Notes under the pieces: generated by a model | The model's input: only the letters and a program-made list of their open reading frames with translations | Told to the model about the DNA's origin: nothing | The model's database searches: none | Program-made: the position numbers and the translations under genes | Shown here: one piece after another, positions 21,339 through 56,240 of the stretch | How the letters are laid out: each line of letters starts with the position of its first letter | Position numbering within the stretch: position 1 is the stretch's first letter | DNA from: Ascidiella aspersa | Lineage: Eukaryota | Assembly (NCBI GenBank): GCA_963924565.1 | Contig: OZ004615.1 | Coordinates: 17,856,001 to 17,920,000, forward strand | Direction of reading: 5' to 3' | DNA length: 64,000 bases

Positions 21339-24337
21339 TCAGATGGCTGTATACCTTCCCATGTACTTCAAGCAGAAGCCCTGTGGCCTGTCGTGCCCAC
21401 TTAAATAGTTTGGTTTCTGCATTTGTTCCAGCAGGCTCATAATCTGGCTGGCGGTCTGTTGCGCTTCGGGGACTTCCTCGCCCGCGTCGAGGCGCGTAGT
21501 TTTGCCCGGGTGGGGCTCGGTGGTGGTTGAGCGCTCGTGGGGACTTTTCCCGGACAGGGGGGCGTTGTCGGGGAGGATGTCGGGCCGTGACACGATACGC
21601 TGTTTGACGTCATCGTCTTCGCTCATGTCTGGCCATTCGGAAGGCGAGGTTTCCGCGGATTCTGCGCGGAAAATGGCGGGTGAAGTTTTGCGTTGCTTTG
21701 ATGAGTTAAAGCAGGGGTTGGCAACCTTTTTGGTCCTGCGGACCGGTTTGAAACTAAAAATTTTCCGCGGGCCGGCTTTAAAAACAACAAATGTTCAATA
21801 AAGGTAACTTATTGCATCTTTTTTTTAATAAACTAATTAAAATGCATGTGCTTGTTTCTAAAACTTTCTTGCCTGAACTTCAAATAATAAATCATTTTGC
21901 AATGCATCTCATATGGCCACAGCACACTTGTTTGTTTTGAACCTCACCAGTGCTTAATAATAATTAAGACTTTTTAGCATACCAATCAACCGTGGAGTAT
22001 GTTTAAACGAAAGTTACGGTGTTTTGAATAGAAAACTACATTTAATTGTTGTTTGCCTTATTTTTAAGTTTCTTGGCATATTGAGTTCAGTTTGGGTTTA
22101 AATAAAATTTTAAATCTGGCAACCCTGCTACGGACCGGTGACGAACTCCTCGCGGACCGGCGGTTGCCGACCACTGAGTTAAAGGATGGCGATAATATTG
22201 GGTCGTATGCGATACCCGACTAGTATTTATGTATGTTCGATAACAAGGTGGTAACTGTATCGATTCGATGCCATGTTGTGCATTTAAGTCATGACTTGCG
22301 ACCCAATGCGTGTACAAACAAATAGTAAAAGCATATTTATAATAAAACTTTTAGAACTTATTGTTGTTCGAAGCGGGTAGGATTCTGTTGTGGAAACACG
22401 TATTAAGTTTTGATTATTTTGTTAGCAGTAATGAAGTTATTTCGATCAGAAGGCCGAATGTTTGGCTCATGATGATATCGCGTATAAGTGTGTTGCACAT
22501 ATTGGAGACATTAGACCTGATAATTCATAATTCGACTTGTGTAGGTTGATAAATTGATACCGATCTGATGTTAGAAATTACGGTTAGAAAAAAAAACAAC
22601 AATATATTTTATACCTTGAAGTGATATGCTGTCGCTGATGAAGTTCGCTCCGGATTGCTTCTGTGGCGTCGAGGATAAATGCTGTTCAGCCTCGCTTTGC
22701 CTTCTTCTCTCTTTCGCGTTGACGAGAGTGCGCACGAGCGTTTGGAGTTTTTCAAGTTTTTGCTGCAAACAAAAAATAAAAGTAGATTAATTAATAAAAC
22801 GTTAAACAACAAAACAACGGTTGCTAACCATTTAAAATTGACACCCTCTTTAAAAACGTAGAGTTGTTAGCGTAAAGCGCCAAAAAGTTTATATTTACAC
22901 AGTAAATGCTGTAAAAACTCGTTATGCGGGACATGGTCTGCTATTTCGATCCAGGACTGGCCCCTGTCCACTGACCTATTTAATAAACCATTTGACTTCA
23001 AAACAGTTCTGTTATCAACTAAACTTGACTTGTGAACTTACACGAGATTTATTGAAAGATTGGAATACAACCCAAACTGTTTTATGTTGCAATAATTCAG
23101 TTTAATAAGATGAAGCCAAACAAACCCGTATGGTGCATACGGTTCGGCTTTTGTTGGATTAAAACGAAATTGAATAGAAGGATTTTTTTGACAGATTTAA
23201 ATCGTTCCTGTGCGACCCACTTGTTTACCCTTCGCGAACCATGTTTAGGCACCACTGTTTTAGGGGAACACTCGTTAAAACCTTCCAGCATTTAATGCGT
23301 AATTTATTTTGCGGTCGCACTAACAGCGGGAACACAAAAAAAGGCCTACAAGGCAGCAATATCTAAGCAGATTAATCTACAATATTAAAGCATTACGACG
23401 ACAAAACCATCTACAATACCGTAGCATTACGAGAAATTGGGTTAGGGTTAAAACTATACATGACCCACCTGCATAACTTCTCGTTCTTGAGCGATGGACG
23501 AAACGTACTCGTCCTTCTCGTGATGACGCTGCTTGAGCAGCTGACGTTGGTTGTGGTAGAGTGTGATTTACTCGCCTGACGGTTGAAAGAAACGAAACAT
23601 TAAACACTTACCACACCATAGATAATGTGCCCTAAAACCGAGAAATCTACTGGTAAAAACACCACGCGCTATTCTGGGTACAATCCCAGTTATATGGACA
23701 AGTTGTGGACATCATTGTATGTGGAATGCCGTACATTTATTCAATTCAGCGATATAAACTTGTTTTATATTTGAGTACCGTGAGAGGAAATTATTAAGAT
23801 GGGTAATCTTAAATCAGTAAGTGTAAAAGTGTTTAAACTGTATACAAGTTATTTGAAACGTTCAGTATTAAAGCATATAATAAGTTTTTTAGAGCACTCG
23901 TACAGCCCACATTGTGTGTGGCTCGCGAACAATACGCACATAACGTTGTATCCCCGGATGCTGACAATCTTGGGACCATCAAGCACTTTATCAAGCGCCT
24001 ATCGTACATGTCGAGTTTCACAGTTTTGTAATGAATCAACGATTCGAATTCTTTTGTGGCCTGCAAAAAGCCGACAAACGTCGCTTTCCTAACGTAAATT
24101 TATTTATATCACACCGACAACGATTCTTCAGGTTCACTCTCCAATCAAACACGCAAGTTGAAAACGTTGGCCATTTCGATCCATGTTGTTGTAGTTGATT
24201 TTTTGCCAGTTTTAAACGCTAGCCGTTATCTTACCGATGGTGTCGCACTCGTTTTGCAGCAGCAAATTGATGTGTTCGAGCTCCTCCACTTTGCTCAGGG
24301 CGTCCACCGTCTCCGTCATTACTTTGGTAAAGCGATC
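21339..24337 (-). pseudogene. GOLGA2: GOLGA2/GM130 3' fragment, unit 1 (disrupted)
   Basis: Minus-strand exons 24337-24235 (DRFTKVMTETVDALSKVEELEHINLLLQNECDTIG), 23575-23469 (E*ITLYHNQRQLLKQRHHEKDEYVSSIAQEREVMQ, TAA at 23570-23568), 22762-22615 (QKLEKLQTLVRTLV...) and 21661-21339 (...TASQIMSLLEQMQKP...GFCLKYMGRYTAI*). These match the GM130 C-terminal motifs I recall (VEELEH..QLSGETDTIGEYIALYQ.QR..LK.RH.EKEEYI, KL.ELQ.LV..LV, TAQQIMQLL). The preceding exon is replaced. Confidence 0.85.
21712..22176. mobile_element. hAT MITE family alpha, 465 bp, in the last GOLGA2 intron (U1)
   Basis: TSD AGTTAAAG (21704-21711, 22177-22184). TIRs CAGGGGTTGGCAACC / GGTTGCCGACCACTG. Confidence 0.88.
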
Positions 24338-24769
24338 CTAGAGCAAAACCAAAAAAAAAATTCATAAACTGACAGGTTTTGTCTATTCTACGGGAAGATT
24401 TGGGATTCATTGAATGAATGCCAGTGACCAAAAATACTTAAGAGTGTGGTGATACTTGGATAGCTTAGTGCCTTTTTATTAACTCAAACACGTCAAATGC
24501 ACGAAGCACGAATTAGAACGCCAAAACTTGCAATTGTCACCCGGCGATATTTCACGCAATAACATTACGATGAAGACTATAGACAAATTAGATACTCCGA
24601 CTGAAGTACCAATTTCTTAGGCACTGTTAAAGTTTTGTCACTGCAAAGAATTGAACAGCAACTAAAAGAGTACCAGTCAATGCTGAATTCTGTATCAGCT
24701 CTACCACGTTAGTAAATATTAAAATAAATCTCTTACCTTCTGCTTGGAGCAAAATTTTAATTGTAATCA

Positions 24770-24949
24770 AACGGACGTTACAAGGTTTGCCACATATATA
24801 TTTCAAATAATTGAGAAGATATTCACATAAAATTTATATATTTTCAAAGACCTAAATCGAACGGACGTTACAGCAATTACCACATATATATTTGAAATGA
24901 TTTCAAAGCTATTCATATAAAATTTATTGGTTTTCAAAGATCTAAATTT
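24770..24949. repeat. Two diverged 90-bp tandem units within the segment replacing a GOLGA2 exon (also in U3, ~46940-47119)
   Basis: AACGGACGTTACA...CACATATATATTT...TTTTCAAAGA.CTAAAT at 24770 and 24860. Confidence 0.7.
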
Positions 24950-26769
24950 GGAGGCACCTGATGGTAAAATAATCAAAAATAGTGGTTTGGTCTGTTGCGT
25001 AAATATTAAAATTGTAGTTATTTTGGGTTAAGTAATACTAAAAGGCTTACATAATCCATATAAGCGTGGTCCAACTATGTTTAGTAGGGCGGGTCGCGAA
25101 AAAACTTTTTTTTCAAATCCACCTGCCTCATATGGATTTTGATAGATAGACAACTAAAACCGTTGTATACAAAGTTTAAGCTCATTTGAACATGTATTGG
25201 TGTGAGGAAATCGAGTTGAATTTTTGCCGAAAATCGCAAAATCGGGTAAAAATGCGAAAATTTAGGTTATGTTTAATCCATATTTTTTAAGTGAAATTCA
25301 TTTGCTATGACCTTATTCTTGTTTTTTAGACAGTTATGGAATAACTGAAGCAAGGTAGATCTGCAGAGATTACATTTTAATATTTATTTGCAGTAGTATT
25401 AAAAGTTGAATTTTTGCAGAAAATCGCAAAATTTATAAAATGGCAAAATTTTGGATTGCCTGCAATCTGTAGTTTTCAAATCAAACATGACTTCAAATCA
25501 ATGTACGATTTACTCAATTGTCTGACCCCGTTCTTGCGAAACACTGTCCCAAAGCGAAACAAGTAAGTCTGTGACAGTTTTGGAAATTACCGATTTATTC
25601 TTGGAAACATACTTTACGGGAAAACATTCCAAGGCGAATAAACGAGGTTTATTTAGTTTACAAGCTAGTTCTCGCTATGTCGTACGTGACCCAGCCAACG
25701 TAAGCGCGAAGTAACTTGAAGGCAATTTTCCATGGCCTTTTCGAAATGCCACAGGTTTTCTTTTTTGTTTGTTAGTCGTTTTCATCCCCCTGGTTAACAT
25801 TAGCACAAGGCCAGTTTACATCGGCGCTTTGAACGAAACTAAATATATCCATTGGCTTTTCCGGTTCTTTAAAACTTTCCGACGACATTTTCCGAGTGTC
25901 AATTAAAATTCACCGTTACTTTGTTGAAAAATCTTTACGGAGTTTTCCTTTGTGATTATTTACCTGAAACTTTGTTTTGCTTTTTTACAACCCACACAGA
26001 TCGCTTACTGCGCCTTTTGTTTTGCCTTGCGTCCTTACAACAGTAATATCTATTTTGAAATTCGTTTCGACACAATGTAAATAGAGCAGCTGGAAACCAC
26101 ACTGCAATTTCTAACTCTCGAATGTGGTGGCGTCTGTGGTATTTGGCTATAGAACACAATCTTATCGATGTCGCCACACGAAGAATCAACATTACGTGAA
26201 TAGGGCTTTTAAATTTTTTTCTCGATTTCGGTCAAAGCTTGAAAGAAAAATACCGTCGAATGTGTGTAAATTTGTAGGTATATATATACGAGACTCTATT
26301 GAATTTCGTGACGAGACAGCACGTGAAATACACGGCGGGCCTGTCATGGATGTAGGTTGATCGGCAAAACGCATAGCAGTCAGTGGCGGACATTAGGTGT
26401 AACTGTTGGACTATAGGTGCAATCGACAGTCATTATTGTTGACAATTACAACTACAGCCACTTGTTAAGTCCCTGTAACTTCGGCTCCGACAGATTTGGA
26501 ATTCATAGCGAATACAATTGGCCTAAATGACTATTTTAAGATTTCTGTGTGACACAATAGTAGCAGCTTTTAAAAGCTATAGATTAGCAAAACGTCGTCA
26601 TAAAACAGGTAACCGCGTTACTGAGGTTTAGGTTTTTAATCTGATCTAAACAATATTTCTTCTGAGTTTTAGTCAGCCTAAGCGTATTTGAAATTAAGTG
26701 TAACGATGGGAAATACTCACCGAATCTGTCGATCAATGATGCAAGCAAGGCAGGCCAGAAAAACAACTA

Positions 26770-26825
26770 GCCCGCAGTGAGGTTCGAACCCACGACCTCC
26801 GGTCATAACGGGACCGTTGCTCTAG
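26770..26825 (-). pseudogene. tRNA-like fragment (3' half; tRNA pseudogene or tRNA-derived SINE head)
   Basis: Minus strand reads ...CCGGAGGTCGTGGGTTCGAACCTCACTGCGGGC, with a B-box GGTTCGAACC and a T-arm. No intact 5' acceptor stem or D-arm. Also in U3-U5 (~38238, ~48956, ~60510); deleted in U1. Confidence 0.55.
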
Positions 26826-27439
26826 AAGAGAAAGTGGGCTACAGGCAGAGAGAGGAGCGAGTCGAGAAACAACCATACGCCAACACTTGCTACCTTCTGT
26901 CAGTACAAGCAACGACATATTGAAGGGAATCAACAGTACCGTATGATTCTATAAAAGACATACACATGTGGGTTTAATAACAACTGTGATCTAGCCCCTC
27001 GGAAGCTGTTTTTGACCAACGATACGAAAGCCATAATCGTTGGTCAAAAAGCAGCTTTTTCCGAGGGGCTAGATGACAGTTGTTATTAAGTGACTTCCCT
27101 TCAAGTGAGCGACTTCCCTTCATTTATCAAAATAACATTACTTAATTATAACCAGAAGAACTCAAAGCGGAGACCCTGAACACCAAACTTCGTTCACTTA
27201 ATCCAGCACTTGACTGAACTAAAACAATATATGGCTGCTTATTGTAAATCGACAAAATTCGTTTTCGGTTGGTTTTACAATTCGTTAAATGTCTCAGATA
27301 TTTCTTATTTTGTGAATAATAAAACTGAGATTCTGTAAGGCCTAATAGTACTACTACGAGACCCAAACAAACTGACGTAAACTCAACGTATGACCACAAT
27401 TTTTTTGTTTTAGTTTCACCACTATAGTTATTGGCGATA

Positions 27440-29231: not shown

Positions 29232-32200
29232 AGGCCGGGAAAAAATAAGTTCGAAGATGAACTGATTCTAACATCGTTTTATCCTACTTTGTGGACAAAA
29301 TAGCACAAATTTATTTATTTTCTGTATCTTATTTGACAGATAAATGTGAAGTTTTCCTGCTTTATAGATTAATTTTTATTTGTTTCTTTACCTTCGTCGG
29401 GCTGGTTAGTTTTTTCGTGCTGAAACCTTGCATGCTATTGTGCTGAAATCTTTCTCATTTTTTCTCTTGTATTTAAGTGCGAAATGCAATGTCGTGTGCA
29501 CTCTAAATGTTTGTTTTTATGATGATCAGGTACGACCAATGGTAAAGGTATATAGGAAAGGTGTGACAGTATAGGCAAGCTTTTGTATATTCTGGACGAT
29601 ATCCAGAGCTATATATAAATCTTTTGAGATTTGTTTTAGAACCTTTACAAAAAAGTACGTTGATTAACATTGTTTGAACAAGAAGTGACGCTAGTTTACT
29701 CAGTAAACAAAATCTTGATATTTATCACCTTAGCAACTTCACTATTTTTGGATGTTTGTTTTTGGCCCAATTATTTTATGTTTGCTGGAAGTTTGGAACG
29801 TACCCGGAATAGAAAAATCTGTTTTCCAAACACTTTTTGCTTGACTTAAGACTTTGGACAAACGACTTGGGATGAAATAAAAGGAATTTTATTTTATTTT
29901 TTATAAAATTGGGTGATTTATTTCAGTTTGTGCACGTAAAAATAATATCTTACTATTTCGCGTTTTTGTTAAGTTTTAGTCGAGTTATTGCTCATAATCG
30001 GATAAGTTTGCCTATTTTAATAGTTTAAAGTTTTATTTTGACGTCAATGAACTTGCTCCAATTATGACTACTTATTACTTATTAAATAAAACTTGACTTG
30101 AACTTAAGTTATTATACACAGGACTTGACTTGGACGTTATTTCACAAATGACTTGGGACTTTAGTCACTTTAAATTGACTTACTTATGACACTGATTACG
30201 GTACTATAAACTTAACTTTAAAAGAAAGTTGCCATTAAAATCAAACTCCAGTTCGTTTAGTCTTGTACTGCGAATTAGGTAGCGAAATTTTGTTGCTAAA
30301 AGTAGTGCTTTGCTTGAAATCCGGGTAGCCCACTTTCTTGCAAAACGACATTAGATTGCAAATTGCTGGCGGTAATAGGACATTGCTATTAATAAAATGT
30401 TATTTGGAAAGGTTTTGCTGCTTCTAACGTCTGGGTCTCATTTCGACGCTAGGCAGATGCATGGCAACATTGACCTTATTGGAATTTGCCTCAAAGAAAG
30501 GTCTTCATTTGTTTAGTTATTAACATTTGTGCACCGTGGATGGGTGTGTGTGCCTTTTAGACAAGAATCCACAATTGCAAGCAACTATCGTTTTTTTTTT
30601 TGCAAACCATCTTCGTTCATGCACCACATTTTAATCCTATAGCGGTAAACTTGCGACACTAAAAGCAACACAACTTATAGTCTTCTAAGATGAGCGTTCG
30701 TAAGTAAAGCCAAATAAAAATGCTTTGTACAATCGGCAGCCATGGCACCGAATAAATTCTCTATTAATGGAAACATGTTGCTACACACTTGTATCGATTA
30801 GTAATTTCGAAACAAAAACGTTCTTCACTACAGCTGCTAAACAAGATGCCCTGTATGAGGAAAATACTCAAGACTGCCACAAGCGACAACTTTTCAGGAC
30901 ACCGGATCTTCTAATAGCAAGAATAACAAGTATATAATATTAATAACAGCAAAGGCAATAAATTTTCGAAATATGCAAGCAAGTGCTGTAACTGTACACA
31001 AAGTAACGCAACAAACCAAAGCTCCCGAGAAAGCGAATAAATACAAAAAAATGCGACTTAGAAGCGCTCAAAAAGGGCATTTGGGGCTCGTTGCCCGATA
31101 GCACCAATACTTGAATGATATTGCACGTGTTGCATATTGTTGCGTTACGAAACGCAGTGTAAAGGATATTTCGTGTCTGTAAATAAACACCCTTTGGGGT
31201 TAATTTTGTGTTGCGCGCTTCCTATAGACAAAACACGCAACGCATTTGCAACTGGCGGCAAATCTAAACAATCGTTTGCCACTGAATTCAGTTCCTTAGT
31301 AAAAAAGCACCTATACTTTACATGAGCGTTTGGGTTTGCGACAGTATGGTTTCGTTTTAGTCGAGGGTTAGTCATTTGACTAAGTTTGTAATATTGAACA
31401 GTGAGGTGTTTTCATAGATGTACAATCACTCATATAGCATGCGTAAAGAAAATGTCCAAGCCACGAGCCAATCTAAAAACTATAGGCTCCTGTATTATAT
31501 TTATTAAAAGCGATTTTTTTGCCTTTTTGCCAGGCTTTTTGTTCTTAGTTGGAGGACTCGTTTAGCTTTACTTTATTTTAAACGACTAAAAAAGATTGTC
31601 GGTGAAATATTTCCATCATTTAACTGTTGATAACCAAGCAAAGTCTTAGGAATTATTCTAATACAAATCGTTAAATTCGCATATTATGATTGAGTAAACT
31701 CTACTTTTAAATTGCAGTAAACCAGTAACCACAGGGGCAAATCGTCGCAACTCGCAAGACATATATAACTCGAATTAAATTAGGTATAGCGCCTGATCAC
31801 ACGTCTCTGGTATAAACCCTTAGTTGTCGCATGCCCAAACAAGTGCCTGATTTAGGCGACCGCATACAAAATGCTTTACAAAAAATAAACCGTCACTGGG
31901 CGGCGTTGGATCTTTCATAGCTCCGAAATTCGAAGGAAAAAAAAACTTGACGCGGCGCTCAGATGGCTGTATACCTTCCCATGTACTTCAAGCAGAAGCC
32001 CTGTGGCCTGTCGTGCCCACTTAAATAGTTTGGTTTCTGCATTTGTTCCAGCAGGCTCATAATCTGGCTGGCGGTCTGTTGCGCTTCGGGGACTTCCTCG
32101 CCCGCGTCGAGGCGCGTAGTTTTGCCCGGGTGGGGCTCGGTGGTGGTTGAGCGCTCGTGGGGACTTTTCCCGGAGAGGGGGGCGTTGTCGGGGAGGATGT

Positions 32201-32331
32201 CGGGCCGTGACACGATACGCTGTTTGACGTCATCGTCTTCGCTCATGTCTGGCCATTCGGAAGGCGAGGTTTCCGCGGTTTCTGCGCGGAAAATAGCGGG
32301 TGAAGTTTTGCGTTGCTTTGATGAGTTAAAG

Positions 32332-32796
32332 CAGGGGTCGGCAACCTTTTTGGTCCTGCGGACCGGTTTGAAACTAAAAATATTTTGCGGTCCGGCTTTA
32401 AAAACAACAAATGTTCAGTAAAGGTAACTTATTGCATATTTTTTTTAATGAACTAATTAAAATGCATGTGCTTGTTTCTAAAACTTTCTTGCCTGAACGT
32501 CAAATAATAAATCATTTTGCAATGCATCTCATATGGCCACAGCACACTCGTTTGTTTTGAACCTCACCAGTGCTTAATAATAATTAAGACTTTTTAGCAT
32601 ACCAATCAACCGTGGAGTATGTTTAAACGAAAGTTACTGTGTTTTGAATAGAAAACTACATTTAATTGTTGTTTGCCTTATTTTTAAGTTTCTTGGCATA
32701 TTGAGTTCAGTTTGGGTTTAAATAAAATTTTAAATCTGGCAACCCTGCTAAGGACCGGTGACCAACTCCTCGCGAACCGGCGGTTGCCGACCACTG
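32332..32796. mobile_element. hAT MITE family alpha, 465 bp (U2)
   Basis: TSD AGTTAAAG on both sides; TIR CAGGGGTCGGCAACC / GGTTGCCGACCACTG. Confidence 0.88.
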
Positions 32797-33968
32797 AGTT
32801 AAAGGATGGCGATAATATTGGGTCGCATGCGATACCCGACTAGTATTTATGTATGTTCGATAACAAGGTGGTAACTGTATCGATTCGATGCCATGTTGTG
32901 CATTTAAGTCATGACTTGCGACCCAATGCGTGTACAAACAAATAGTAAAAGCATATTTATAATAAAACTTTTAGAACTTATTGTTGTTCGAAGCGGGTAG
33001 GATTCTGTTGTGGAAACACGTATTAAGTTTTGATTATTTTGTTAGCAGTAATGAAGTTATTTCGATCAGAAGGCCGAATGTTTGGCTCATGATGATATCG
33101 CGTACAAGTGTGTTGCACATATTGGAGACATTAGACCTGATAATTCATAATTCGACTTGTGTAGGTTGACAAATTGATACCGATCTGAAGTTAGAAATTA
33201 CGGTTAGAAAAAAACAACAATATATTTTATACCTTGAAGTGATATGCTGTCGCTGATGAAGTTCGCTCCGGATTGCTTCTGTGGCGTCGAGGATAAATGC
33301 TGTTCAGCCTCGCTTTGCCTTCTTCTCTCTTTCGCGTTGACGAGAGTGCGCACGAGCGTTTGAAGTTTTTCAAGTTTTTGCTGCAAACAAAAAATAAAAG
33401 TAGATTAATTAATAAAACGTTAAACAACAAAACAACGGTTGCTAACCATTTAAAATTGACACCCTCTTTAAAAACGTAGAGTTGTTAGCGTAAAGCGCCA
33501 AAAAGTTTATATTTACACAGTAAATGCTGTAAAAACTAGTTATGCGGGACATGGTCTGCTATTTCGATCCAGGAAACCATTTGACTTCAAAACAGTTCTG
33601 TTATCAACTAAACTTGACTTGTGAACTTCTACGAGATTTATTGAAAGACTTGAATACCGCCCAAACTGTTTTATGTTGCAATAATTCAGTTTAATAAGAT
33701 GAAGCCAAACAAATCCGTATGGTGCATACGGTTCGGCTTTTGTTGGATTAAAACGAAATTGAATAGAAGGATTTTTTTGACAGATTTAAATCGTTCCTGT
33801 GCGACCCACTTGTTTACCCTTCGCGAACCATGTTTAGGCACCACTGTTTTAGGGAACACTCGATGAAACCTTCCAGCATTTCATGCGTAATTTATTTTGC
33901 GGTCGTACTAACAGCGGGAACACAAAATAAGACCTACAAGGCAGCAATATCTTAAGCAGATTAATCTA

Positions 33969-34633
33969 CAATACCATAGCATTACGACAACAAAACCATC
34001 GACAATACCATAGCATTACGACAACAAAACCATCTGCAATACCATAGCATTCCGACGACAAAACCATATGCAATACCATAGCATTCCGACGACAAAACCA
34101 TCGACAATACCATAGCATTACGACGACAAAACCATCTGCAATACCATAGCATTACGACGACAAAACCATCGACAATACCATAGCATTCCGACGACAAAAC
34201 CATCTGCAATACCATAGCATTACGACGACAAAACCATCTGCAATACCATAGCATTACGACGACAAAACCATCGACAATACCATAGCATTCCGACGACAAA
34301 ACCATATGCAATACCATGGCATTACGACGACAAAACCATCTGCAATACCATAGCATTACGACGACAAAACCATCGACAATACCATAGCATTCCGACGACA
34401 AAACCATCTGCAATACCATAGCATTACGACGACAAAACCATCTGCAATACCATAGCATTACGACGACAAAACCATCGACAATACCATAGCATTCCGACGA
34501 CAAAACCATATGCAATACCATGGCATTACGACGACAAAACCATCTGCAATACCATGGCATTACGACGACAAAACCATCTGCAATACCATAGCATTACGAC
34601 GACAAAACCATCTGCGATACAATAGCATTACGA
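33969..34633. repeat. 34-bp minisatellite, ~19.6 copies, in a GOLGA2 intron (U2)
   Basis: Unit CAATACCATAGCATTACGACGACAAAACCATCTG with CATTAC/CATTCC and ATCTG/ATCGA/ATATG variants. Confidence 0.95.
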
Positions 34634-42277: not shown

Positions 42278-43629
42278 CCCTATATCGAAGAAAATACTCA
42301 AGACTGCCACAAGCGACAACTTTTCAGGACACCGGATCTTCTAATAGCAAGAATAACAAGTATATAATATTAATAACAGCAAAGGCAATAAATTTTCGAA
42401 ATATGCAAGCAAGTGCTGTAACTGTACATAAAGTAACGCAACAAACCAAAGCTCCCGAGAAAGCGAATAAATACAATATTTCGTGTCTTCGTAAATAAAC
42501 AGCACTTGGGGTTAATTTTGTGTTGCGCGCTTCCTATAGACAAAACACGCAACGCATTTGCAACTGGCGTTAAATCTAAACAATCGTTTGCCACTGAATT
42601 TAGTTCCTTAGTAAAAAAGCACCTATACTTTTGCGACAGCATGGTTTCGTTTTAGTCGAGGGTTAGTCATTTGACTAAGTTTGTAATATTGAACAGTGAG
42701 GTGCTTTTATAGATGTACAACAATCACTCATATAGCATGCGTAAAGAAAATGTCCAAGCCACGAGCCAATCTAAAAACTATAGGCTCCTGTAGCATATTT
42801 ATTAAAAGCGATTTTTTTGCCTTTTTGCTAGGCTTTTTGTACTTAGTTGGAGGAGTCGTTTAGCTTTACTTTATTTTAAACGACTAAAAAAGGTTGCCGG
42901 TGAAATATTTCCATCATTTAACTAATCAGGCATGAAAAGTCTTAGGAATTATTCTAATACAAATCGTTAAATTCGCATATTATGATTGAGTAAACTCTAC
43001 TTTAAAATTGCAGTAAACCAGTAACCACAGGGGCAAATCGTCGCAACTCGCAAGACATATATAACTCGAATTAAATTAGGTATAGCGCCTGATCACACGT
43101 CTCTGGTATAAACCTTTTAAACTTAATGTCGCCCAAACAAGTGCCTGGTTTAGGCGACCGCATACAAAATGCTTTACAAAAAATAAACCGTCACTGGGCG
43201 GCGTTGGATCTTCCATAGCTCCGAAATTCGAAGGAAAAAAAAACTTGACGCGGCGCTCAGATGGCTGTATACCTTCCCATGTACTTCAAGCAGAAGCCCT
43301 GTGGCCTGTCGTGCCCACTTAAATAGTTTGGTTTCTGCATTTGTTCCAGCAGGCTCATAATCTGGCTGGCGGTCTGTTGCGCTTCGGGGACTTCCCCGCC
43401 CGCGTCGAGGCGCGTCGTTTTGCCCGGGTGGGGCTCGGAGGTGGGTGAGCGCTCGCAGGGGCTTTCACCGGACAGGGGGGCGTTGTCGGGGAGGATGTCG
43501 GGCCGCGACGCAATACGCTGTCTGACCTCATCGTCTTCGCTCATGTCTGGCCAATCGGAAGGCGAGGTTTCCGCGGTTTCTGCGCGGAAAATGGCGGGTG
43601 AAGTTTTGCGTTGCTTTGATGAGTTAAAG

Positions 43630-44116
43630 CAGTGGTTCTCAAACTGGGGCCCGCGAGCCAATTTTCTGGGACCGCGAAGCACCTAACAAAAATCAACTAG
43701 ACCTCCTGAAGGAGAACATTTTAATTTCAACGTGTTTGCGCTCGTCATCAAAAGCTACGATTAGTTGTTCATTCACGTGATTGCATGCTTTGAGCTGAAT
43801 TGTGCATTGTGACGTCATAATGGAGCGTTGTGCTAATAAGAATTACGTTTCCAGAGCTTGCTGTGCTGCCATTGTGGGTTGTACGTTCGCGGTTTAAAAC
43901 TTATCGTGATTGCTTCGCTCAAATAAAGTGATTTCGTTAGCGTTAAAATAGTAAATACGGGATCAACAAGCCTACCTAAGACTGTATGTGCACCCGTCTA
44001 ATTCTAACGTGTTATTTTATGTTTATTTATGTGTATTTTTAAGGGGACCGCGAGCAACTGAAAAAATTGCTAGGGGACCGTTGCGTAATTTTTTAGAATA
44101 AGTTTGAGAACCACTG
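43630..44116. mobile_element. hAT MITE family beta, 487 bp (U3 only)
   Basis: Perfect 16-bp TIR CAGTGGTTCTCAAACT / AGTTTGAGAACCACTG; TSD AGTTAAAG (43622-43629, 44117-44124). Interior looks unrelated to family alpha. Confidence 0.9.
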
Positions 44117-45380
44117 AGTTAAAGGATGGCGATAATATTGGGTCGTATGCGATACCCGACATGCTAGATTGGTGTTTGTTCGATAACAAGGTGGTAACTG
44201 TATCGATCTGATGCCATATTAAGTTGTGCATTTAAGTTTAAGTCATGACTTGCGACCCAATGCGTGTACAAACAAATGGTAAAAGCATATGTATAATAAA
44301 AGTTTTACAACTTATTGTTGTTCGAAGCGGCGTGCTTCTCAAGCTATTGGACTTGTAGATTTTTTTAGCGTACGCAATTATGTGTTCTGTTCGAGGGTAG
44401 GATTCTGTTGTGGAAACACGTATTAAGTTTTGATTATTTTGTTAGCAGTAATGAAGTTATTTCGATCAGAAGGCCGAATGTTTGGCTCATGATATCGCGT
44501 ATAAGTGTGTTGCACATATTGGAGACATTAGACCTGATAATTCATAATTCGACTTGTGTAGGTTGATAAATTGATACCGATCTGAAGTTAGAAATTACGG
44601 TTAGAAGAAAACAACAATATATTTTATACCTTGAAGTGATATGCTGTCGCTGATGAAGTTCGCTCCGGATTGCTTCTGTGGCGTCGAGGATAAATGCTGT
44701 TCAGCCTCGCTTTGCCTTCTTCTCTCTTTCGCGTTGACGAGAGTGCGCACGAGCGTTTGAAGTTTTTCAAGTTTTTGCTGCAAACAAAAAATAAAAGTAG
44801 ATTACTTAATAAAAGGTTACACAACAAAACAACGGTTGCTAACCATTTAAAATTGACAACCCTTTAAAAACGTAGAGAGCGCGAAAAAGTTTATATTTAC
44901 ATAGTAAATGCTGTAAAAACTAGTTATACAGGACATGGTCTGCTACTTCTACCCAGGACTGGCCCCTGTCCATTGAACTATTTAATAAACCATTTGGCTT
45001 CAAAACAGTTCTGTTATCAACTAAACTTGACTTGTGAACTTACACGAGATTTATTGAAAGATTGGAATACAACCCAAACTGTTTTATGTTGCAATAATTT
45101 AGTTTAATAAGATAAAGCCAAATAAACCTGTATGGTGCAATATTTCGGCCTTCGTTGGAATAAAACGAAATTGAATAGAAGGATTTTTTGGACAGATTTA
45201 AATCGTTCCTATGCGACCCACTTGTTGACCCTTCGCGAACCATGTTTAGGCACCACTGTTTTAGGGAACACTCGATAAAACCTTCCAGCATTTAATGCGT
45301 AATTTATTTTGCGGTCGCACTAACAGCGGGAACACAAAATAAGACCTACAAGGCAGCAATATCTTAAGCAGATTAATCTA

Positions 45381-45603
45381 CAATACCATAGCATTCCGAC
45401 GACAAAACCATCGACAATACCATAGCATTCCGACGATAAAACCATATGCAATACCATAGCACTACGACGACAAAACCATCTGCAATACCATAGCATTACG
45501 ACGACAAAACCATCTGCAATACCATAGCATTACGACGACAAAACCATCTGCAATACCATAGCATTACGACGACAAAACCATCTGCAATACCATAGCATTA
45601 CGA
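45381..45603. repeat. 34-bp minisatellite, ~6.6 copies (U3)
   Basis: Same unit and site as 33969-34633. Confidence 0.93.
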
Positions 45604-49640: not shown

Positions 49641-51398
49641 ATGACAGGACAAGATAAAGACGAGAAGAACACGTGGAAATATCAATTGTCGGGATGCTTC
49701 CGTAACAAAACCCTCTGCATAAAAGCCTTTCTGCTCCCATGTGTATTGGCAGGTGAATAGACGAATAAGAAAGTTTGTTAAAAGTCACCTTAAATAGTTT
49801 ATAGCCCGCAGACCAGTAGAGCCAACACGCGGTTCGCGGGCCGCATGCCGTCATGGTCCAGTTTTATGCGGCTCTTTCGTTCGTTCTGTGTTTGAGATTT
49901 CTTAGGATGTACAATGTAGGCTACAGTTCCAACTTCTTTTGCTTAAGTTATTGATTATATTGTCGGTTCAAACTTATATTGTATGTTACTATATAAAATC
50001 AAGTCAATAAATTTTAGAAACTTCGACAGCGTGATGGTTTTTTTTAAGAAGTACTTAAACACCAATGATTCTATTGAATATATTATGTAATACGCAATAG
50101 TGTTAGTATGCAGCATTTTACAATAATATAACGGAGCAAGAAATGTATGTGTACAATGTCTCTTCGCGAAAACAGTTTTTGCCTATTTTACTACTTGAAT
50201 ATAAACAAACCTCATTTTGCACTTCCATATTGCCGTGGTACCCATTTTTTCTAAATAGAACATTTTGCAAATATAACCCAGCTAAAGCAAATAAGTGTTT
50301 TTTGCGGGCATAGTGGAGTTGTCATTATAATAGGCCCTACTCAATGAAAAATCAGAGATTTTTAATTCCTTGTTCGGATTTGCCCCTTGAATGTACAACA
50401 ATAACTAAAACTAACGTGTGTTGTTTAGGGCAAACTGCTGAAGACACCAACCAGGGTTTCTTCGAGGAATGTTGTTTGGCCGCGCTTTGCTACCCTTGCG
50501 GCTCTTACTGCATGGCGATGACCAGACAGGCAACTAGAACTGAGAAAGGAATTGAAGTAAACTATTAACTTTTCCGAGAAAAAAAATTAGTGTATTCGAA
50601 GGTTTTTAGTGTATACAGGGAAAACTTTTGATTCGATCCGATGAATGTTTTACTGTAACAATCCGAATTTGCTTCACTACTTCGGTGAAAATTGAATGAA
50701 TAACTTTTCCAGCTATTGTTTTCTTAACGAAATATTTATGGGGCAAATACTAAAAAAGCCTTTTTAATATTTATGCTCAAATTAAGACCTATCTTGGATT
50801 TGTAAGAAAAAAAATTATTTTTTTTTAACTTTTGTCATCACTATATCCATTCGAAATTTATCAAACTTTCTTAGACAAATTCGTGTAAAATGAATTTGAA
50901 ATTCACATAAGCTACAAATTTCTATTTTCTACCTTCAGGGCACGTTCGCAGATGATTGTCTTGCATCGTTGTGCTGTCCTTGCTGCACTCTTGTACAAAT
51001 TAGAATGGTGAGAAATAAATGCATCAGAAGTAGTAATATTAAAAACCAACTTGTGTAACCGATGTCAAGCCACGTTATTTCAACACTATACAAAATAAAT
51101 TTAAGTGTGACAACAAAAATACAGTTATTTTGAATTATTAGCACTAACCACTAATAAATAATAATAATTAAACACCATTGTCAGGTAACGAGGTACTGCG
51201 TAAAACCTGAACTTAACAAAAAAGTTTACAAATACCCAATAATACTAGTCGGTTGAAGAACTTTTTTTATTTATACATTATATTAAAAGGTACCGTAGGC
51301 TTATTTATAGATTTACCAAGATGTCATTGTAATCCGTTAATTTTGTTTGTGAATTACAGGAACTCGAGCACAAAGAACAACGTATTGAGCGAAGTTAA
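49641..51398 (+). CDS. PLAC8: PLAC8-family paralog B, copy 4 (115 aa)
   Basis: Exons 49641-49752, 50429-50556, 50939-51007, 51360-51398. Intact. Confidence 0.9.
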
Positions 51399-52513
51399 AG
51401 GCCGGGAAAAATGAGTTCGAAGATGATCTGGTTTTAAGATCGTTTTACCCTACTTTGTAGAAATGCCACGAATTTATTTATTTTCTGTAGCCTCTTTAAC
51501 AGACAAGTGTGAAGTTTTCTTGTTTTATAGATTAATTTTTATTTGTTTCTTTACCTTCGCCGAGCTGGTTAGTTTTTTTTTCGTGCTGAAACCTTGCATG
51601 CTATTGTGCTGAAATCTTTCCCATTTTTTCTCTTGTATTTAAGTGCGAAATGCAATGTCGTGTGCACTCTAAATGTTTGTTTTTATGATGATCAGGTACG
51701 ACCAATGGTAAAGGTATATAGGAAAGGTGTGACAGTATAGGCAAGCTTTCCTATATTCTGGACGTTATCCAGAGCTATATATAAATCTTTGGAGATTTGT
51801 TTCAGAACCTTTACAAAGAAGTACGTTGATTAACATTGTTTGAACAAGAGGTGACGCTAGTTTGGTCAGTAAACAAAATTAAATAAAACTCAACTTGAAC
51901 TTTAGTTATTTTACGTAGGATTAGGTGTTATTCCGCGAAATTTTGTTGCTAAAAGTAGTGCTTGGCTTGGAATCCGGGTAGCCCACTTTCTTGCAAAACA
52001 ACAATAGATTGCAAATTGCTGGCGGTAATAGAACATTGCTATTAATAAAATGTTATTTGGAAAGGTTTTGCTGCTTCAAACGTCTGGGTCTCATTTCGAC
52101 GGTAGGCAGATGAATGGCAACATTGACCTTTTGGAATTTGCCTCAAAGAAAGGTCTTCATTTGCTTAGTTATTAACATTTGTGCACCGTGGATGGATGTG
52201 TGTGCCTTTTAGAAAAGAATCCACAATTGCAAGCAACTATCGTTTTTTTTTGTAAACCATCTTCGTTCATGCACCACATTGTAAACCTATAGCGGTAAAC
52301 TTGCGACACTAAAAGCTAAAAGCAACACAACTTATAGTCTTCTAAGATGAGCGTTCGTAAGTAAAGGCAAATAAAAATGCTTGGTACAATCGGCAACCAT
52401 GGCACCGAATAAATTCTCTATTAATGGAAACATGTTGCTACACACTTGTATCGATTAGTTATTTCGAAACAAAAACGTTCTTCACTACAGCTGCTAAACA
52501 AAATGCCCTGTAT

Positions 52514-53126
52514 CAGGGATGGCGAACCTTTTCATCGCGCGGGTTACAAACACGATCTTAATCCTTACAAAATGCTCAAGTGGGTCATGTATTTAGTTAT
52601 TTGCTAATTTTATGCGAAACTTTGATGTTGCGTCGGTTCAAGTGTTATCGTCTCGGTTGGCAACCAAGGTTTTCATACGATTTCCAAATTCGGATTTTCA
52701 CAGATATTGAAACCAAAATAGTTAACAAATGCTACAGCAATTTTTATGGGATTACAGGAATTCAGTAGAAAGCTTTTCAGCATGGTTTATCCAGGATTTT
52801 CAGATTTTTTTAGTCTGCGAGCTCTTACTTTCCAGTTTCCCTTTAAGCTTAAAGGATCGCCACGTTTTACAGCGATAAACAAAATGCGTTTAGTGTCTGC
52901 TTTTTGCACGCATTTGTTGAAAAGCAGTTAACGTACCGTACACCTACTTTCTTTGCACGACCCACAGATGGGCAACCACGATTTAAATAGTAAGGCTACA
53001 TAGCGAAAAACTTATTTTTAAATTTATCATTTCCTGAAAATGATTGATAACTTGTTTGTATTTCTACAGGAACAAGTGGGTCCTTAAAAATCTGTGGTGT
53101 GTCACAAAAGTGGTTCGCCATCTCTG
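52514..53126. mobile_element. hAT-type MITE (U4 copy of 19611-20223)
   Basis: Same TIRs and TSD. Confidence 0.85.
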
Positions 53127-54603
53127 CCCTATATCGAAGAAAATACTCAAGACTGCCACAAGCGACAACTTTTCAGGACACCGGATCTTCTAATAGCAAG
53201 AATAACAAGTATATAATATTAATAACAGCAAAGGCAATAAATTTTCGAAATATGCAAGCAAGTGCTGTAACTGTACACAAAGTAACGCAACAAACCAAAG
53301 CTCCCGAGAAAGCGAATAAATACAAAAAAAAATGCGACTTAGAAGCGCTCAAAAAGGGCATTTGGGGCTCGTTGCCCGATAGCACCAATACTTGATATTG
53401 CACGTGTTGCATATCGTCGCGTTACAAAACGCAGTGTAAAGGATATTTCGTGTCTTCGTAAATAAACAGCACTTTGGGTTAATTTTGTGTTGCGCGCTTC
53501 CTATAGACAAAACACGCAACGCATTTGCAACTGGCGGTAAACAATCGTTTGCCACTGAATTTAGTTCCTTAGTAAAACAGCACCTATACTTTACATGAGC
53601 GTTTGGGTTTGCGACAGCATGGTTTCGTTTTAGTCGAGGGTTAGTCATTTGACTAGGTTTGTAATATTGAACAGTGAGGTGTTTCCATAGATGTACAATC
53701 ACTCATATAGCATGCGTAAAGAAAATGTCCAAGCCACGAGCCAATCTAAAAACTATAGGCTCCTGTAGCATATTTATTAAAAGCGATTCTTTTGCCTTTT
53801 TGCTAGGCTTTTTGTACTTAGTTGGAGGACTCGTTAGCTTTACTTTATTTTAAACGACTAAAAAAGATTGTCGGTGAAATATTTCCATCATTTAACTGTT
53901 GATAACCAAGCAAAGTCTTAGGAATTATTCTAATACAAATCGTTAAATTCGCATATTATGATTGAGTAAACTCTACTTTTAAATTGCAGTAAACCAGTAA
54001 CCACAAGGGCAAATCGTCGCAACCCGCAAGACATATATAACTCGAATTGAATTATGTATAGCGCCTGATCACACGTCTCTGGTATAAACCCTTAGTTGTC
54101 GCATGCCCAAACAAGTGCCTGATTTAGGCGACCGCATACAAAATGCTTTACGAAAAATAAACCGTCACTGGGCGGCGTTGGATCTTTCATAGCTCCGAAA
54201 TTCGAAGGAAAAAAAAACTTGACGCGGCGCTCAGATGGCTGTATACCTTCCCATGTACTTCAAGCAGAAGCCCTGTGGCCTGTCGTGCCCACTTAAATAG
54301 TTTGGTTTCTGCATTTGTTCCAGCAGGCTCATAATCTGGCTGGCGGTCTGTTGCGCTTCGGGGACTTCCTCGCCCGCGTCGAGGCGCGTAGTTTTGCCCG
54401 GGTGGGGCTCGGTGGTGGTTGAGCGCTCGTGGGGACTTTTCCCGGACAGGGGGGCGTTGTCGGGGAGGATGTCGGGCCGTGACGCGATACGCTGTTTGAC
54501 GTCATCGTCTTCGCTCATGTCTGGCCATTCGGAAGGCGAGGTTTCCGCGGATTCTGCGCGGAAAATGGCGGGTGAAGTTTTGCGTTGCTTTGATGAGTTA
54601 AAG

Positions 54604-55068
54604 CAGGGGTCGGCAATCTTTTTGGTCCTGCGGACCGGTTTGAAACTAAAAATTTTCCGCGGGCCGGCTTTAAAAACAACAAATGTTCAGTAAAGGTAAC
54701 TTATTGCATCTTTTTTTTAATAAACTAATTAAAATGCATGTGCTTGTTTCTAAAACTTTCTTGCCTGAACGTCAAATAATAAATCATTTTGCAATGCATC
54801 TCATATGGCCACAGCACACTCGTTTGTTTTGAACCTCACCAGTGCTTAATACTAATTAAGACTTTTTATCATACCAATCAACCGTGGAGTATGTTTAAAC
54901 GAAAGTTACTGTGTTTTGAATAGAAAACTACATTTAATTGTTGTTTGCCTTATTTTTAAGTTTCTTGGCATATTGCGTTCAGTTTGGGTTTAAATAAAAT
55001 TTTAAATCTGGCAACCCTGCTACGGACCGGTGACGAACTCCTCGCGGACCGGCGGTTGCCGACCACTG
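54604..55068. mobile_element. hAT MITE family alpha, 465 bp (U4)
   Basis: TSD AGTTAAAG on both sides; TIRs as in U1/U2. Confidence 0.88.
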
Positions 55069-56240
55069 AGTTAAAGGATGGCGATAATATTGGGTCGTAT
55101 GCGATACCCGACTAGTATCTATGTATGTTCGATAACAAGGTGGTAACTGTATCGATTCGATGCCATGTTGTGCATTTAAGTCATGACTTGCGACCCAATG
55201 CGTGTACAAACAAATAGTAAAAGCACATTTATAATAAAACTTTTAGAACTTATTGTTGTTCGAAGCGGGTAGGATTCTGTTGTGGAAACACGTATTAAGT
55301 TTTGATTATTTTGTTAGCAGTAATGAAGTTATTTCGATCAGAAGGCCGAATGTTTGGCTCATGATGATATCGCGTACAAGTGTGTTGCACATATTGGAGA
55401 CATTAGACCTGATAATTCATAATTCGACTTGTGTAGGTTGACAAATTGATACCGATCTGAAGTTAGAAATTACGGTTAGAAAAAAACAACAATATATTTT
55501 ATACCTTGAAGTGATATGCTGTCGCTGATGAAGTTCGCTCCGGATTGCTTCTGTGGCGTCGAGGATAAATGCTGTTCAGCCTCGCTTTGCCTTCTTCTCT
55601 CTTTCGCGTTGACGAGAGTGCGCACGAGCGTTTGAAGTTTTTCAAGTTTTTGCTGCAAACAAAAAATAAAAGTAGATTAATTAATAAAACGTTAAACAAC
55701 AAAACAACGGTTGCTAACCATTTAAAATTGACACCCTCTTTAAAAACGTAGAGTTGTTAGCGTAAAGCGCCAAAAAGTTTATATTTACACAGTAAATGCT
55801 GTAAAAACTAGTTATGCGGGACATGGTCTGCTATTTCGATCCAGGAAACCATTTGACTTCAAAACAGTTCTGTTATCAACTAAACTTGACTTGTGAACTT
55901 CTACGAGATTTATTGAAAGACTTGAATACCGCCCAAACTGTTTTATGTTGCAATAATTCAGTTTAATAAGATGAAGCCAAACAAACCCGTATGGTGCATA
56001 CGGTTCGGCTTTTGTTGGATTAAAACGAAATTGAATAGAAGGATTTTTTTGACAGATTTAAATCGTTCCTGTGCGACCCACTTGTTTACCCTTCGCGAAC
56101 CATGTTTAGGCACCACTGTTTTAGGGAACACTCGATGAAACCTTCCAGCATTTCATGCGTAATTTATTTTGCGGTCGTACTAACAGCGGGAACACAAAAT
56201 AAGACCTACAAGGCAGCAATATCTTAAGCAGATTAATCTA

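What the first reader, a model, noticed from the sequence alone, without database searches (positions are those of the whole stretch)
21704..55076. Two different hAT MITEs occupy the identical 8-bp target site in paralogous units (possible element replacement)
In U1, U2 and U4 the last GOLGA2 intron reads GATG-AGTTAAAG-[465-bp alpha, TIR CAGGGGT(C/T)GGCAA]-AGTTAAAG-GATGGC. In U3 it reads GATG-AGTTAAAG-[487-bp beta, TIR CAGTGGTTCTCAAACT, different interior]-AGTTAAAG-GATGGC. Both have perfect TSDs, with no footprint and no nesting. One explanation is that two hAT families independently hit the same base pair (an extreme hot spot). The other is that one element was excised and the gap repaired from, or re-targeted by, another element sharing terminal CAG(T/G)GGT bases, as in Drosophila P-element replacement. 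The perfect TIRs suggest beta is younger. A beta-like end also lies at 1-113.
Basis: partly seen in the sequence, partly recalled or inferred. Interest (0 to 1): 0.75.

Follow-up and report, generated by a model that had tools for sequence, protein, structure and literature searches.

The report
Two unrelated MITEs share one target site
In a sea-squirt tandem gene array, two unrelated small cut-and-paste transposons sit at exactly the same base pair in different repeat units, most likely because that spot is the best match in the whole unit to the target sequence both families prefer.

Summary
The array has seven units and none elsewhere. All seven read GATG-AGTTAAAG-[element]-AGTTAAAG-GATGGC. 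Four carry the 465-bp alpha (U1, U2, U4, U5) and three carry the 483-487-bp beta (U3, U6, U7). None is empty.

Alpha and beta cannot be aligned with each other. Both belong to large families (at least 971 and 860 candidate copies). Both make 8-bp duplications with a central TA, the mark of Buster-type hAT elements.

A target-site model built from 30 independent insertions elsewhere gives the motif AT-n-nTYTARAn-n-AT. Under it, the array's site (ATG-AGTTAAAG-GAT) is the top-scoring of 10,134 positions in the emptied unit. It also scores above all 30 real sites.

I therefore favour two independent insertions into a sequence-defined hot spot, in two old unit lineages about 5% apart (about 0.6). 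Repeated insertion at one site is a known kind of event.

Replacement is not excluded. Alpha is the later arrival, with a branch of about 0.7-1.3% before its copies split. Beta (3.8%) is about as old as the split of the unit types. Reads did not bridge the junctions, and no outgroup or empty site was found.

The parts
21704..21711 (+). U1 left target-site duplication AGTTAAAG
21712..22176 (+). U1 alpha MITE, 465 bp, Buster-type hAT. The 5' end is CAGGGGTTGGCAACC and the 3' end is GGTTGCCGACCACTG.
22177..22184 (+). U1 right target-site duplication AGTTAAAG
32324..32804 (+). U2: TSD, alpha (32332-32796), TSD
43622..43629 (+). U3 left target-site duplication AGTTAAAG
43630..44116 (+). U3 beta MITE, 487 bp, Buster-type hAT, with a perfect 16-bp TIR CAGTGGTTCTCAAACT
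44117..44124 (+). U3 right target-site duplication AGTTAAAG
54596..55076 (+). U4: TSD, alpha (54604-55068), TSD
21472..21711 (.). Left part of the flank block whose fixed differences follow the alpha/beta split (8 fixed sites in 240 columns). Farther out, other groupings of units take over.
22185..22346 (.). Right part of the same flank block (9 fixed sites in 155 ungapped columns)
21342..21626 (-). Candidate last coding exon of the GOLGA2/GM130-tail gene. It is open in all seven units. The MITE site lies about 50 nt upstream, in gene sense, of a candidate acceptor ending at 21662.
   Evidence: the acceptor is read (inference)
1..113 (+). Diverged beta-type 3' end, cut by the window start, followed by a TA-centred 8-mer

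Best explanation
Alpha and beta are two unrelated non-autonomous hAT elements of the Buster type. Both choose targets of the form AT-n-nTYTARAn-n-AT. They also share a subterminal motif, so the same or closely related transposases probably move them (inferred). The 14 bases ATG-AGTTAAAG-GAT in this intron-like stretch are the best such target in the roughly 10-kb repeat unit. The array descends from two old unit types, or two old alleles later joined by unequal crossing-over, that differ by about 5% around the site. Beta entered one type at about the time the types split. Alpha entered the other type later, at the same base pair. Unit duplication, unequal crossing-over and short gene conversions then produced today's order: alpha, alpha, beta, alpha, alpha, beta, beta. 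Shown here: the anatomy, the family membership, the target motif, the rank of the site, and the relative branch lengths. Inferred: that the alpha lineage was empty when alpha arrived.
For: 1. Anatomy. Identical TSD and flanks in 7 of 7 units, and no other copy of the site in the genome.
2. Real families. Both families are large and have different TSDs at every other locus. TA occupies TSD positions 4-5 in 30 of 30 independent sites. This is the Buster-family consensus nnnTAnnn (PMC3517528, passages).
3. Rank of the site, 14-column model. The model, built without the array, ranks the site 1 of 10,134 positions in the emptied unit, both for all 30 sites and for the 16 beta sites. It ranks 7 for the 13 alpha sites. 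Only 1-3 positions score higher in the emptied 62-kb window.
4. Score against real sites. The site scores 6.08, above the leave-one-out score of every one of the 30 real sites (maximum 5.9). Only 6 of 182,242 background positions score as high.
5. The model predicts real sites. In leave-one-out tests, 20 of 30 true sites fall in the top 1% of their roughly 3-kb context and 4 of 30 rank first.
6. Flank preference. The A at -3 and T at -2 recur in the independent listing. My tally by eye of about 68 distinct flanks gives A in 41, T in 38 and both in 21.
7. Coincidence probability. It is 0.38% for one alpha plus one beta insertion in the unit, and 31% of that falls on this very site. A double hit is thus expected exactly here, whereas a single first insertion rarely lands on so good a site (0 of 30).
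8. Timing. Alpha's stem is short (2 substitutions plus 1 deletion private to the array; 0.013), against a flank split of 0.054. Alpha therefore arrived after the unit types split.
9. Precedent. Repeated insertion at one site, including two distinct PIF elements at one maize site and hobo hot spots, is cited in PMC1925063 (passages). P-element double insertions favour the best motif matches (PMC5932611, passages).
Against: 1. No empty site was found: 0 of 7 units, 0 matches to the joined empty 14-mer in the genome, and 0 hits for either flank in the metagenome collection.
2. Even with the motif, the coincidence is rare: 0.38% per pair. These are also the only two intact MITEs of this terminal type in the 64-kb window plus 30 kb of neighbouring sequence.
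3. With the 8 TSD columns alone, the site ranks only 48 of 10,140 (all 30 sites), 159 (alpha) and 30 (beta), and 267 positions score higher in 62 kb. The top rank therefore depends on the flanking AT...AT columns, learned from only 30 sites.
4. Beta's private branch (0.038 + 0.004) is about as long as the depth of the unit-type split (about 0.04 by midpoint). Beta may predate the split, in which case the alpha lineage once carried beta.
5. Rates are uneven. Alpha has 8 and 12 derived changes in U1 and U2 but 1 in U4 and U5, so clock arguments are rough.
Confidence: 0.6

Rival explanations
1. One-step replacement, with alpha displacing a resident beta. Transposase excised beta in one unit. The break was repaired by synthesis that copied an alpha element from elsewhere, switching template within the few terminal bases both families share. 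TSD and flanks were left untouched.
For: The substitution is precise at both breakpoints with the TSD kept, as in P-element replacement of a KP element (PMC6643891, passages). Alpha's 3' end and both beta ends share 7 terminal bases, and alpha's 5' end shares 6 of 7. A shared subterminal motif, GGWCCGCGAR, gives 4 hits in the window, all inside alpha or beta, against 0.13 expected. This suggests that one transposase acts on both. Beta is about as old as the unit-type split and alpha is younger. Block boundaries of the mosaic and a recent duplication boundary lie within about 50-280 bp of the element, as expected if breaks occur there.
Against: By established knowledge (recalled, not checked here), hAT excision leaves hairpinned flanks and no element sequence at the break. 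Unlike P, it offers no long terminal homology to prime copying. Only 7 bases are shared, and no chimeric terminus is seen: alpha's asymmetric ends are family-wide. The extreme target score of the site is expected for a double hit (31%) but not for a single first insertion (0 of 30 real sites score as high). My searches found no natural or experimental hAT case.
Confidence: 0.12
2. Two-step turnover. Beta was present before the unit types split. It was excised cleanly from one lineage, restoring a single AGTTAAAG, and alpha later inserted into the vacated site.
For: Beta's age is about that of the split and alpha is younger. The site is a top target, so re-use is plausible. The Stowaway case shows insertion at a site an earlier element had left (PMC1925063, passages).
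Against: It needs a footprint-free hAT excision, which is uncommon (recalled), in addition to the same-site hit that the simpler account also needs. No footprint or extra TSD copy is seen in any unit. In the Stowaway case a footprint was left.
Confidence: 0.12
3. One reading: alpha was ancestral (it is in the majority of units) and beta replaced it in U3's lineage.
For: Alpha is in 4 of 7 units. Beta's TIRs are perfect.
Against: If alpha were ancestral, its private branch should be at least as long as the alpha-side branch of the flank tree. It is 2 substitutions plus 1 deletion in 465 bp (stem 0.013), while beta's is 15 substitutions in 487 bp (stem 0.038). This would put almost all of the 0.054 flank split on the beta side, a 3-4-fold rate difference. 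TIR perfection is a family trait, not a sign of age.
Confidence: 0.04
4. Assembly artefact: the beta units are mis-joined, or two alleles were laid in tandem by the assembler.
For: No read or contig that I could see bridges a flank-beta junction. In run X6 the beta-type flank letters are a small minority: at 43506-43527, 26-27 of 28-29 reads show the other letter. Sea squirts are said to be highly heterozygous (recalled).
Against: There are three beta units with their own flank haplotype and small mutual differences: U6 has a 4-bp deletion and 4 substitutions. Contigs of run X2 match U3's flank (43480-43584) and beta's interior (43916-44066) without a difference. Even if the two types were alleles, the same-site puzzle would remain.
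Confidence: 0.03

Closest known systems
Buster-family hAT MITEs, for example Mar of Drosophila willistoni (PMC3517528, passages read)
   Same: Short non-coding elements with 8-bp TSDs of consensus nnnTAnnn. Their TIRs begin CAG(G/A)GGT, which is close to alpha's CAGGGGTCGGC.
   Different: Different interiors and a different host (a sea squirt). I derived an extended target motif with AT three bases outside each end of the TSD. I did not see this stated in the passages I read. No autonomous partner was identified here.
Recurrent insertion at one site: Stowaway MITEs in beta-amylase intron 4 of Triticeae. [quoted passage not shown]
   Same: Divergent elements at exactly the same target in homologous sequences, explained by non-random target choice.
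   Different: Those cases are orthologues across species, or alleles, with a 2-3-bp target (TA or TTA). In the Stowaway case footprints and empty sites survive. Here the copies are paralogous units of one array, the target is 8 bp plus flanks, the two families are unrelated, and no empty site or footprint survives.
Double insertion of P and hobo elements at one site (PMC5932611, passages read)
   Same: Second hits fall on sites that match the target motif better than single insertions do, which parallels the top score of this site.
   Different: Those events give tandem dimers with a TSD between the two copies on one chromosome. Here each unit holds a single element.
P-element replacement, or targeted transposition (PMC6643891, passages read; Heslip and Hodgetts 1994 seen only in its reference list)
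   Same: One element is substituted for another precisely at both breakpoints, with the original TSD kept.
   Different: P donor and resident share long identical termini, and P excision leaves terminal overhangs that prime the copying (recalled). Alpha and beta share 7 bases, and hAT excision leaves none (recalled). The event here is evolutionary and unobserved.

Membership tests
hAT superfamily, Buster-type, non-autonomous (MITE) | 8-bp target-site duplication that differs from copy to copy | tested here: met
   31 non-array copies with TSDs matching in at least 7 of 8 bases, different at each independent locus.
hAT superfamily, Buster-type, non-autonomous (MITE) | TSD consensus nnnTAnnn | tested here: met
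   T at position 4 and A at position 5 in 30 of 30 independent sites. The consensus is as given in PMC3517528.
hAT superfamily, Buster-type, non-autonomous (MITE) | Short terminal inverted repeats beginning CAG | tested here: met
   alpha matches at 13 of its first 15 terminal bases, and beta has a perfect 16 bp.
hAT superfamily, Buster-type, non-autonomous (MITE) | High copy number of short, non-coding, homogeneous copies | tested here: met
   at least 971 and 860 candidates, 383 exact beta ends and 2,127 exact alpha-type ends. Coding capacity was not examined beyond the elements' size.
hAT superfamily, Buster-type, non-autonomous (MITE) | An autonomous partner encoding a Buster-clade transposase with the same ends | not tested
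Recurrent independent insertion at a hot spot | Unrelated elements with the identical TSD in homologous sequences | tested here: met
Recurrent independent insertion at a hot spot | The site is an exceptional match to the elements' target preference | tested here: met
   The site ranks 1 of 10,134 with 14 columns and 48 of 10,140 with the TSD columns alone.
Recurrent independent insertion at a hot spot | An empty site in the lineage that later received the second element | tested here: inconclusive
   No empty copy was found in the genome, in metagenome contigs or among the listed joints of the laid reads (18 joints were not shown).
Transposon replacement (P-type targeted transposition) | Precise substitution at both breakpoints with the TSD retained | tested here: met
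Transposon replacement (P-type targeted transposition) | Extended terminal homology between resident and incoming element | tested here: not met
   7 shared terminal bases and no other similarity.
Transposon replacement (P-type targeted transposition) | Loss of the resident element coupled to gain of the new one, dependent on transposase | not testable with these tools
   This needs an observed event or a series of haplotypes.

The most novel reading that the evidence does not exclude
Alpha displaced a resident beta in a single repair event. Beta was excised, and the gap was filled by copying an alpha element from elsewhere, with the switch of template inside the 7 terminal bases shared by the two families. 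This would be a natural hAT counterpart of P-element replacement. It would mean that MITE families moved by one transposase can take over each other's sites without leaving a mark.
Probability: 0.12. Interest if true: 0.7.

Novelty: new member of a known kind. Interest (0 to 1): 0.4.

Why it matters
Presence or absence of a transposon at a site is widely used as a nearly homoplasy-free marker. Here two unrelated elements occupy one base pair, with identical duplications and no scar, so element identity has to be checked as well as occupancy.

The case also shows that a simple sequence model of target choice, learned from 30 insertions, picks out the doubly hit site as the best in 10 kb. Hot spots of this transposon group therefore appear largely predictable from sequence.

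If the minority reading (in-place replacement) were right, it would reveal a new route of turnover among MITE families.

Tried and rejected
Alpha and beta as derivatives or inversions of one element: rejected. The local alignment is no better than shuffles on either strand.

AGTTAAAG as part of the elements rather than a TSD: rejected. Other copies of both families have different 8-mers.

An empty or third-state copy elsewhere in the genome: none. The flanks occur 7 times, all in the array. The last-exon protein occurs 7 times, all in the array, so there is no parent gene or outgroup at E 0.01 or better. The junction pattern occurs 7 times, all in the array. The joined empty 14-mer occurs 0 times.

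Relatives in metagenome contigs: 0 hits for either flank.

Reads: the laid stretch was swamped by family copies. Depth was 300-870 over beta, against 10-25 over the flanks. No listed piece bridges a junction. None of the 15 listed joints skips the element, but 18 joints were not shown. One 417-nt contig of organism B (run X5, record 21) fits the right flank only from 44121 on, and its first 149 letters fit nothing in the stretch.

Clock dating of beta against the split of the unit types: inconclusive. The values are 0.042 against about 0.04, and rates are uneven among alpha copies.

U6 is therefore known only for about 4.1 kb around the site.

Earlier notes of this scan: nothing on same-site MITEs.

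Supplementary files of the papers were not consulted. The lists of insertion sites in PMC5932611 and PMC3517528 may hold more on target motifs.


Full report
**What is there.** The window is G000:C9:17856001-17920000 of a 308.6-Mb assembly. Earlier notes of this scan call the organism a sea squirt; I did not check that.

The strings GATGAGTTAAAGCAG and AGTTAAAGGATGGC each occur four times in the window, at the stated places, against none in shuffles. The inserts between them are:
- 465 bp in U1 (21712-22176), U2 (32332-32796) and U4 (54604-55068);
- 487 bp in U3 (43630-44116).

Searching the whole genome with the 300 bp on either side finds seven copies of the site, all in this one array. The three units beyond the window carry a 465-bp alpha (U5), a 483-bp beta (U6) and a 487-bp beta identical to U3's (U7). 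The order is therefore alpha, alpha, beta, alpha, alpha, beta, beta. All seven have a perfect AGTTAAAG on both sides and the same neighbouring bases. None is empty, nested or scarred.

**The two elements.** They cannot be aligned. The best local score is 22 on the same strand and 20 on the opposite strand, against 20.2 +/- 2.2 for shuffles. The reverse complement of alpha's 3' end begins CAGTGGTC, beta begins CAGTGGTT, and alpha's 5' end begins CAGGGGT.

Both are members of large families: at least 971 and 860 first-look candidates, 383 exact copies of beta's first 18 bases, and 2,127 exact alpha-type TIRs preceded by A or T at -20.

At other loci each copy has its own 8-bp duplication, so AGTTAAAG is a target duplication and not part of the elements. 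In 30 of 30 independent sites with matching duplications, positions 4-5 are TA. This is the consensus nnnTAnnn given for the Buster family of hAT elements. That family's Drosophila MITE Mar has TIRs CAG(G/A)GGTAGGC (PMC3517528, passages).

Alpha and beta also share a subterminal motif, GGWCCGCGAR. It has 4 hits in the window, all inside alpha or beta, against 0.13 expected. I infer, but did not show, that related transposases move both.

**The array is a mosaic of two old unit types.** Around the site, informative positions split the units exactly as the elements do (U3, U6, U7 against U1, U2, U4, U5). There are 8 fixed differences in the 240 bp to the left and 9 in 155 ungapped columns to the right. 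The flank tree supports the split at 100/100, with an internal branch of 0.054.

Beyond about -280 and +230 other groupings take over: U6+U7 against the rest, then U3+U5+U7 against the rest. U5 has a short beta-type patch at -185 to -164 inside alpha-type flanks. U2 and U4 differ by 58 columns in the 2 kb that end about 50 bp right of alpha, and by only 19 in the next 8.9 kb. A recent 22.3-kb duplication therefore has an edge next to the element. Recombination and short conversions have clearly reshuffled the units, and the element travels with about 400 bp of its own flank type.

**Which element is older.** Against a majority row of 20 other alpha copies, the array's alphas differ at 37 fixed columns. 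Of these, 34 are shared with the nearest relatives L023 and L024, so only 2 substitutions and 1 deletion are private to the array. Against 18 other beta copies, the array's betas differ at 18 fixed columns, and 16 of these (15 substitutions) are private.

In trees the alpha clade has a stem of 0.013 and tips of 0.0025-0.0255. The beta clade has a stem of 0.038 and tips of 0.004. The beta family is star-like, with median tips of 0.033. The midpoint depth of the flank split is about 0.04.

My reading is that alpha arrived after the unit types split, and that beta is about as old as the split, so the clock cannot say whether it came before or after. Three caveats apply:
- a cut-and-paste element can arrive already aged;
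- the rows compared are the 40 best-scoring of many candidates;
- alpha's derived changes are uneven: 8 in U1, 12 in U2, and 1 in U4 and U5.

Beta's perfect TIR and alpha's G/T mismatch are both family-wide.

**Is the site a hot spot?** From 30 independent insertions (13 alpha, 16 beta, 1 other; the array was excluded) I built a symmetric target model. Besides TA, it prefers Y at position 3 and R at position 6, T at 2 and A at 7, and A-T at the third and second base outside each end. This gives AT-n-nTYTARAn-n-AT.

The outside preference also shows in the independent listing. My tally by eye of about 68 distinct flanks gives A at -3 in 41, T at -2 in 38, and both in 21, where about 31%, 31% and 10% would be expected.

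The model predicts real sites. In leave-one-out tests the median rank is 0.32% within about 3 kb, 20 of 30 sites fall in the top 1%, and 4 of 30 rank first.

The array's site, ATG-AGTTAAAG-GAT, departs from the motif at one position only (G at TSD position 2). With 14 columns it ranks:
- 1 of 10,134 positions in the emptied unit, both for all 30 sites and for the beta sites, and 7 for the alpha sites;
- behind only 1-3 positions in the emptied 62-kb window, for the all-site and beta models (20-30 for the alpha model).

Its score of 6.08 exceeds the leave-one-out score of every real site (maximum 5.9), and only 6 of 182,242 background positions reach it.

With the 8 TSD columns alone it ranks 48, 159 and 30 of 10,140. 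The result therefore rests partly on the flank columns and on a small training set.

**How likely is a coincidence?** Under the model, one alpha and one beta insertion into the unit coincide with probability 0.38%. The figure is 0.01% if targets were uniform and 0.125% if any TA would do. Of that 0.38%, 31% falls on this very site.

A double hit is thus still rare, but if one occurs this is where it is expected. By contrast, a single first insertion, which is all that a replacement account needs, rarely lands on so good a site (0 of 30 real sites). I take that as roughly a 6-10-fold likelihood advantage for accounts that involve two separate hits.

Rough occupancy estimates use about 3,400 alpha-type ends and several hundred beta copies. 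The duplicated share of the genome is my own guess. Together they suggest that between about 0.01 and a few tenths of such events are expected per genome. That is rare, but not absurd for a genome-wide scan. This estimate is inference, not a tool result.

**Replacement.** P-element replacement is real and precise at both breakpoints (PMC6643891, passages). As I recall it, though, it relies on long shared termini and on overhangs left at the break. hAT excision leaves hairpinned flanks with no element sequence. Alpha and beta share 7 bases, and no chimeric terminus is visible.

A template-switch repair at those 7 bases is conceivable. My recollection of 'abortive gap repair' for Ac/Ds was not checked in a paper. 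A boundary of the mosaic and a duplication edge close to the element fit breaks occurring there.

I found no hAT example in four literature searches. Those searches cover only the held library.

If replacement happened, the dating says alpha replaced beta, not the reverse.

**Reads.** One stretch around U3 was laid with four runs. Contigs of run X2 match U3's own flank (43480-43584) and beta's interior (43916-44066) without a difference. No listed piece bridges a junction, and family copies swamp the element.

In raw reads of another sample (X6), beta-type flank letters are a small minority: at 43506-43527, 26-27 of 28-29 reads show the other letter. The make-up of the array probably varies between individuals.

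The misassembly question is therefore not settled by reads. It is made unlikely by three beta units that have their own flank type and small mutual differences.

**Gene context.** A minus-strand ORF at 21342-21626 hits the GM130 C-terminal motif weakly (E 0.014, below the cut-off). It is open in all seven units and is 91-92% identical in protein between the two unit types. The site lies about 50 nt upstream, in gene sense, of a candidate acceptor (read). 'Last GOLGA2 intron' is plausible but not shown.

**Verdict.**
- The best explanation is two independent insertions at the unit's best target, by two MITE families with the same target preference, in two old unit lineages (0.6).
- Two-step turnover and one-step replacement of beta by alpha stand at about 0.12 each.
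- The rest is unassigned.

This is a clean new example of a known phenomenon, with a quantified hot spot. It is not a new mechanism on present evidence.

Noticed in passing
window 30847-32850 against 53125-55130: U2 and U4 are 99.8% alike from about 32850 onward (19 differences in 8.9 kb) but differ at 58 columns in the 2 kb before that. The edge of the recent 22.3-kb duplication, or of a conversion tract, therefore lies about 50 bp to the right of the alpha element.
   Followed up: partly
G000:C9, U5 left flank, 185 to 164 bases left of the site (outside the window; locus L004): A patch of about 22 bp of beta-type letters sits inside otherwise alpha-type flanks of an alpha unit. This suggests short-tract gene conversion between unit types.
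   Followed up: no
window 22149-22158, 55041-55050 (alpha); 43669-43678, 44045-44054 (beta): The two otherwise unrelated MITEs share a subterminal 10-base motif, GGWCCGCGAR. It has 4 hits against 0.13 expected. It may be a common transposase-binding site.
   Followed up: partly
window 33964-34633 and 56236-56905: The self-comparison shows a ladder of offsets in steps of 34 bases, that is, a tandem repeat of 34-bp period of about 670 bp. It is present in some units only.
   Followed up: no
window 21712-22176 and 32332-32796 against 54604-55068: The alpha copies of U1 and U2 carry 8 and 12 derived changes, while those of U4 and U5 carry 1. U1's 240 + 155 flank columns have no private change. U2 has four changes within 10 bases (32382-32391). 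This looks like uneven rates or small repair patches inside the element.
   Followed up: partly
window 21342-21626 (-) and its six paralogues: The GM130-tail-like exon is open in all seven units. The open frame is 151 aa in alpha units and 141 aa in beta units. Protein identity between the two unit types is only 91-92%, so the exon evolves about as fast as its surroundings.
   Followed up: no
window 43457-43527, reads of run X6: About 85-93% of reads (about 93% at 43506-43527) carry the letter of the alpha-type flank, where the assembly has beta-type flanks in 3 of 7 units at 43506-43527 (4 of 7 at 43457-43467, where U5 also carries them). Unit composition or copy number of the array seems to differ between individuals.
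   Followed up: no
window 44329-44394: A 66-bp stretch is present in U3, U5, U6 and U7 and absent in U1, U2 and U4. Some reads and one contig skip it, and read depth just beside it is high, so it is probably part of a dispersed repeat.
   Followed up: no
G000:C1, listing: One 20-base flank, with small variants, precedes the alpha-type TIR at 9 or more of the first 100 listed places. This looks like a composite repeat, or a longer element that contains this TIR, and not like independent insertions.
   Followed up: no
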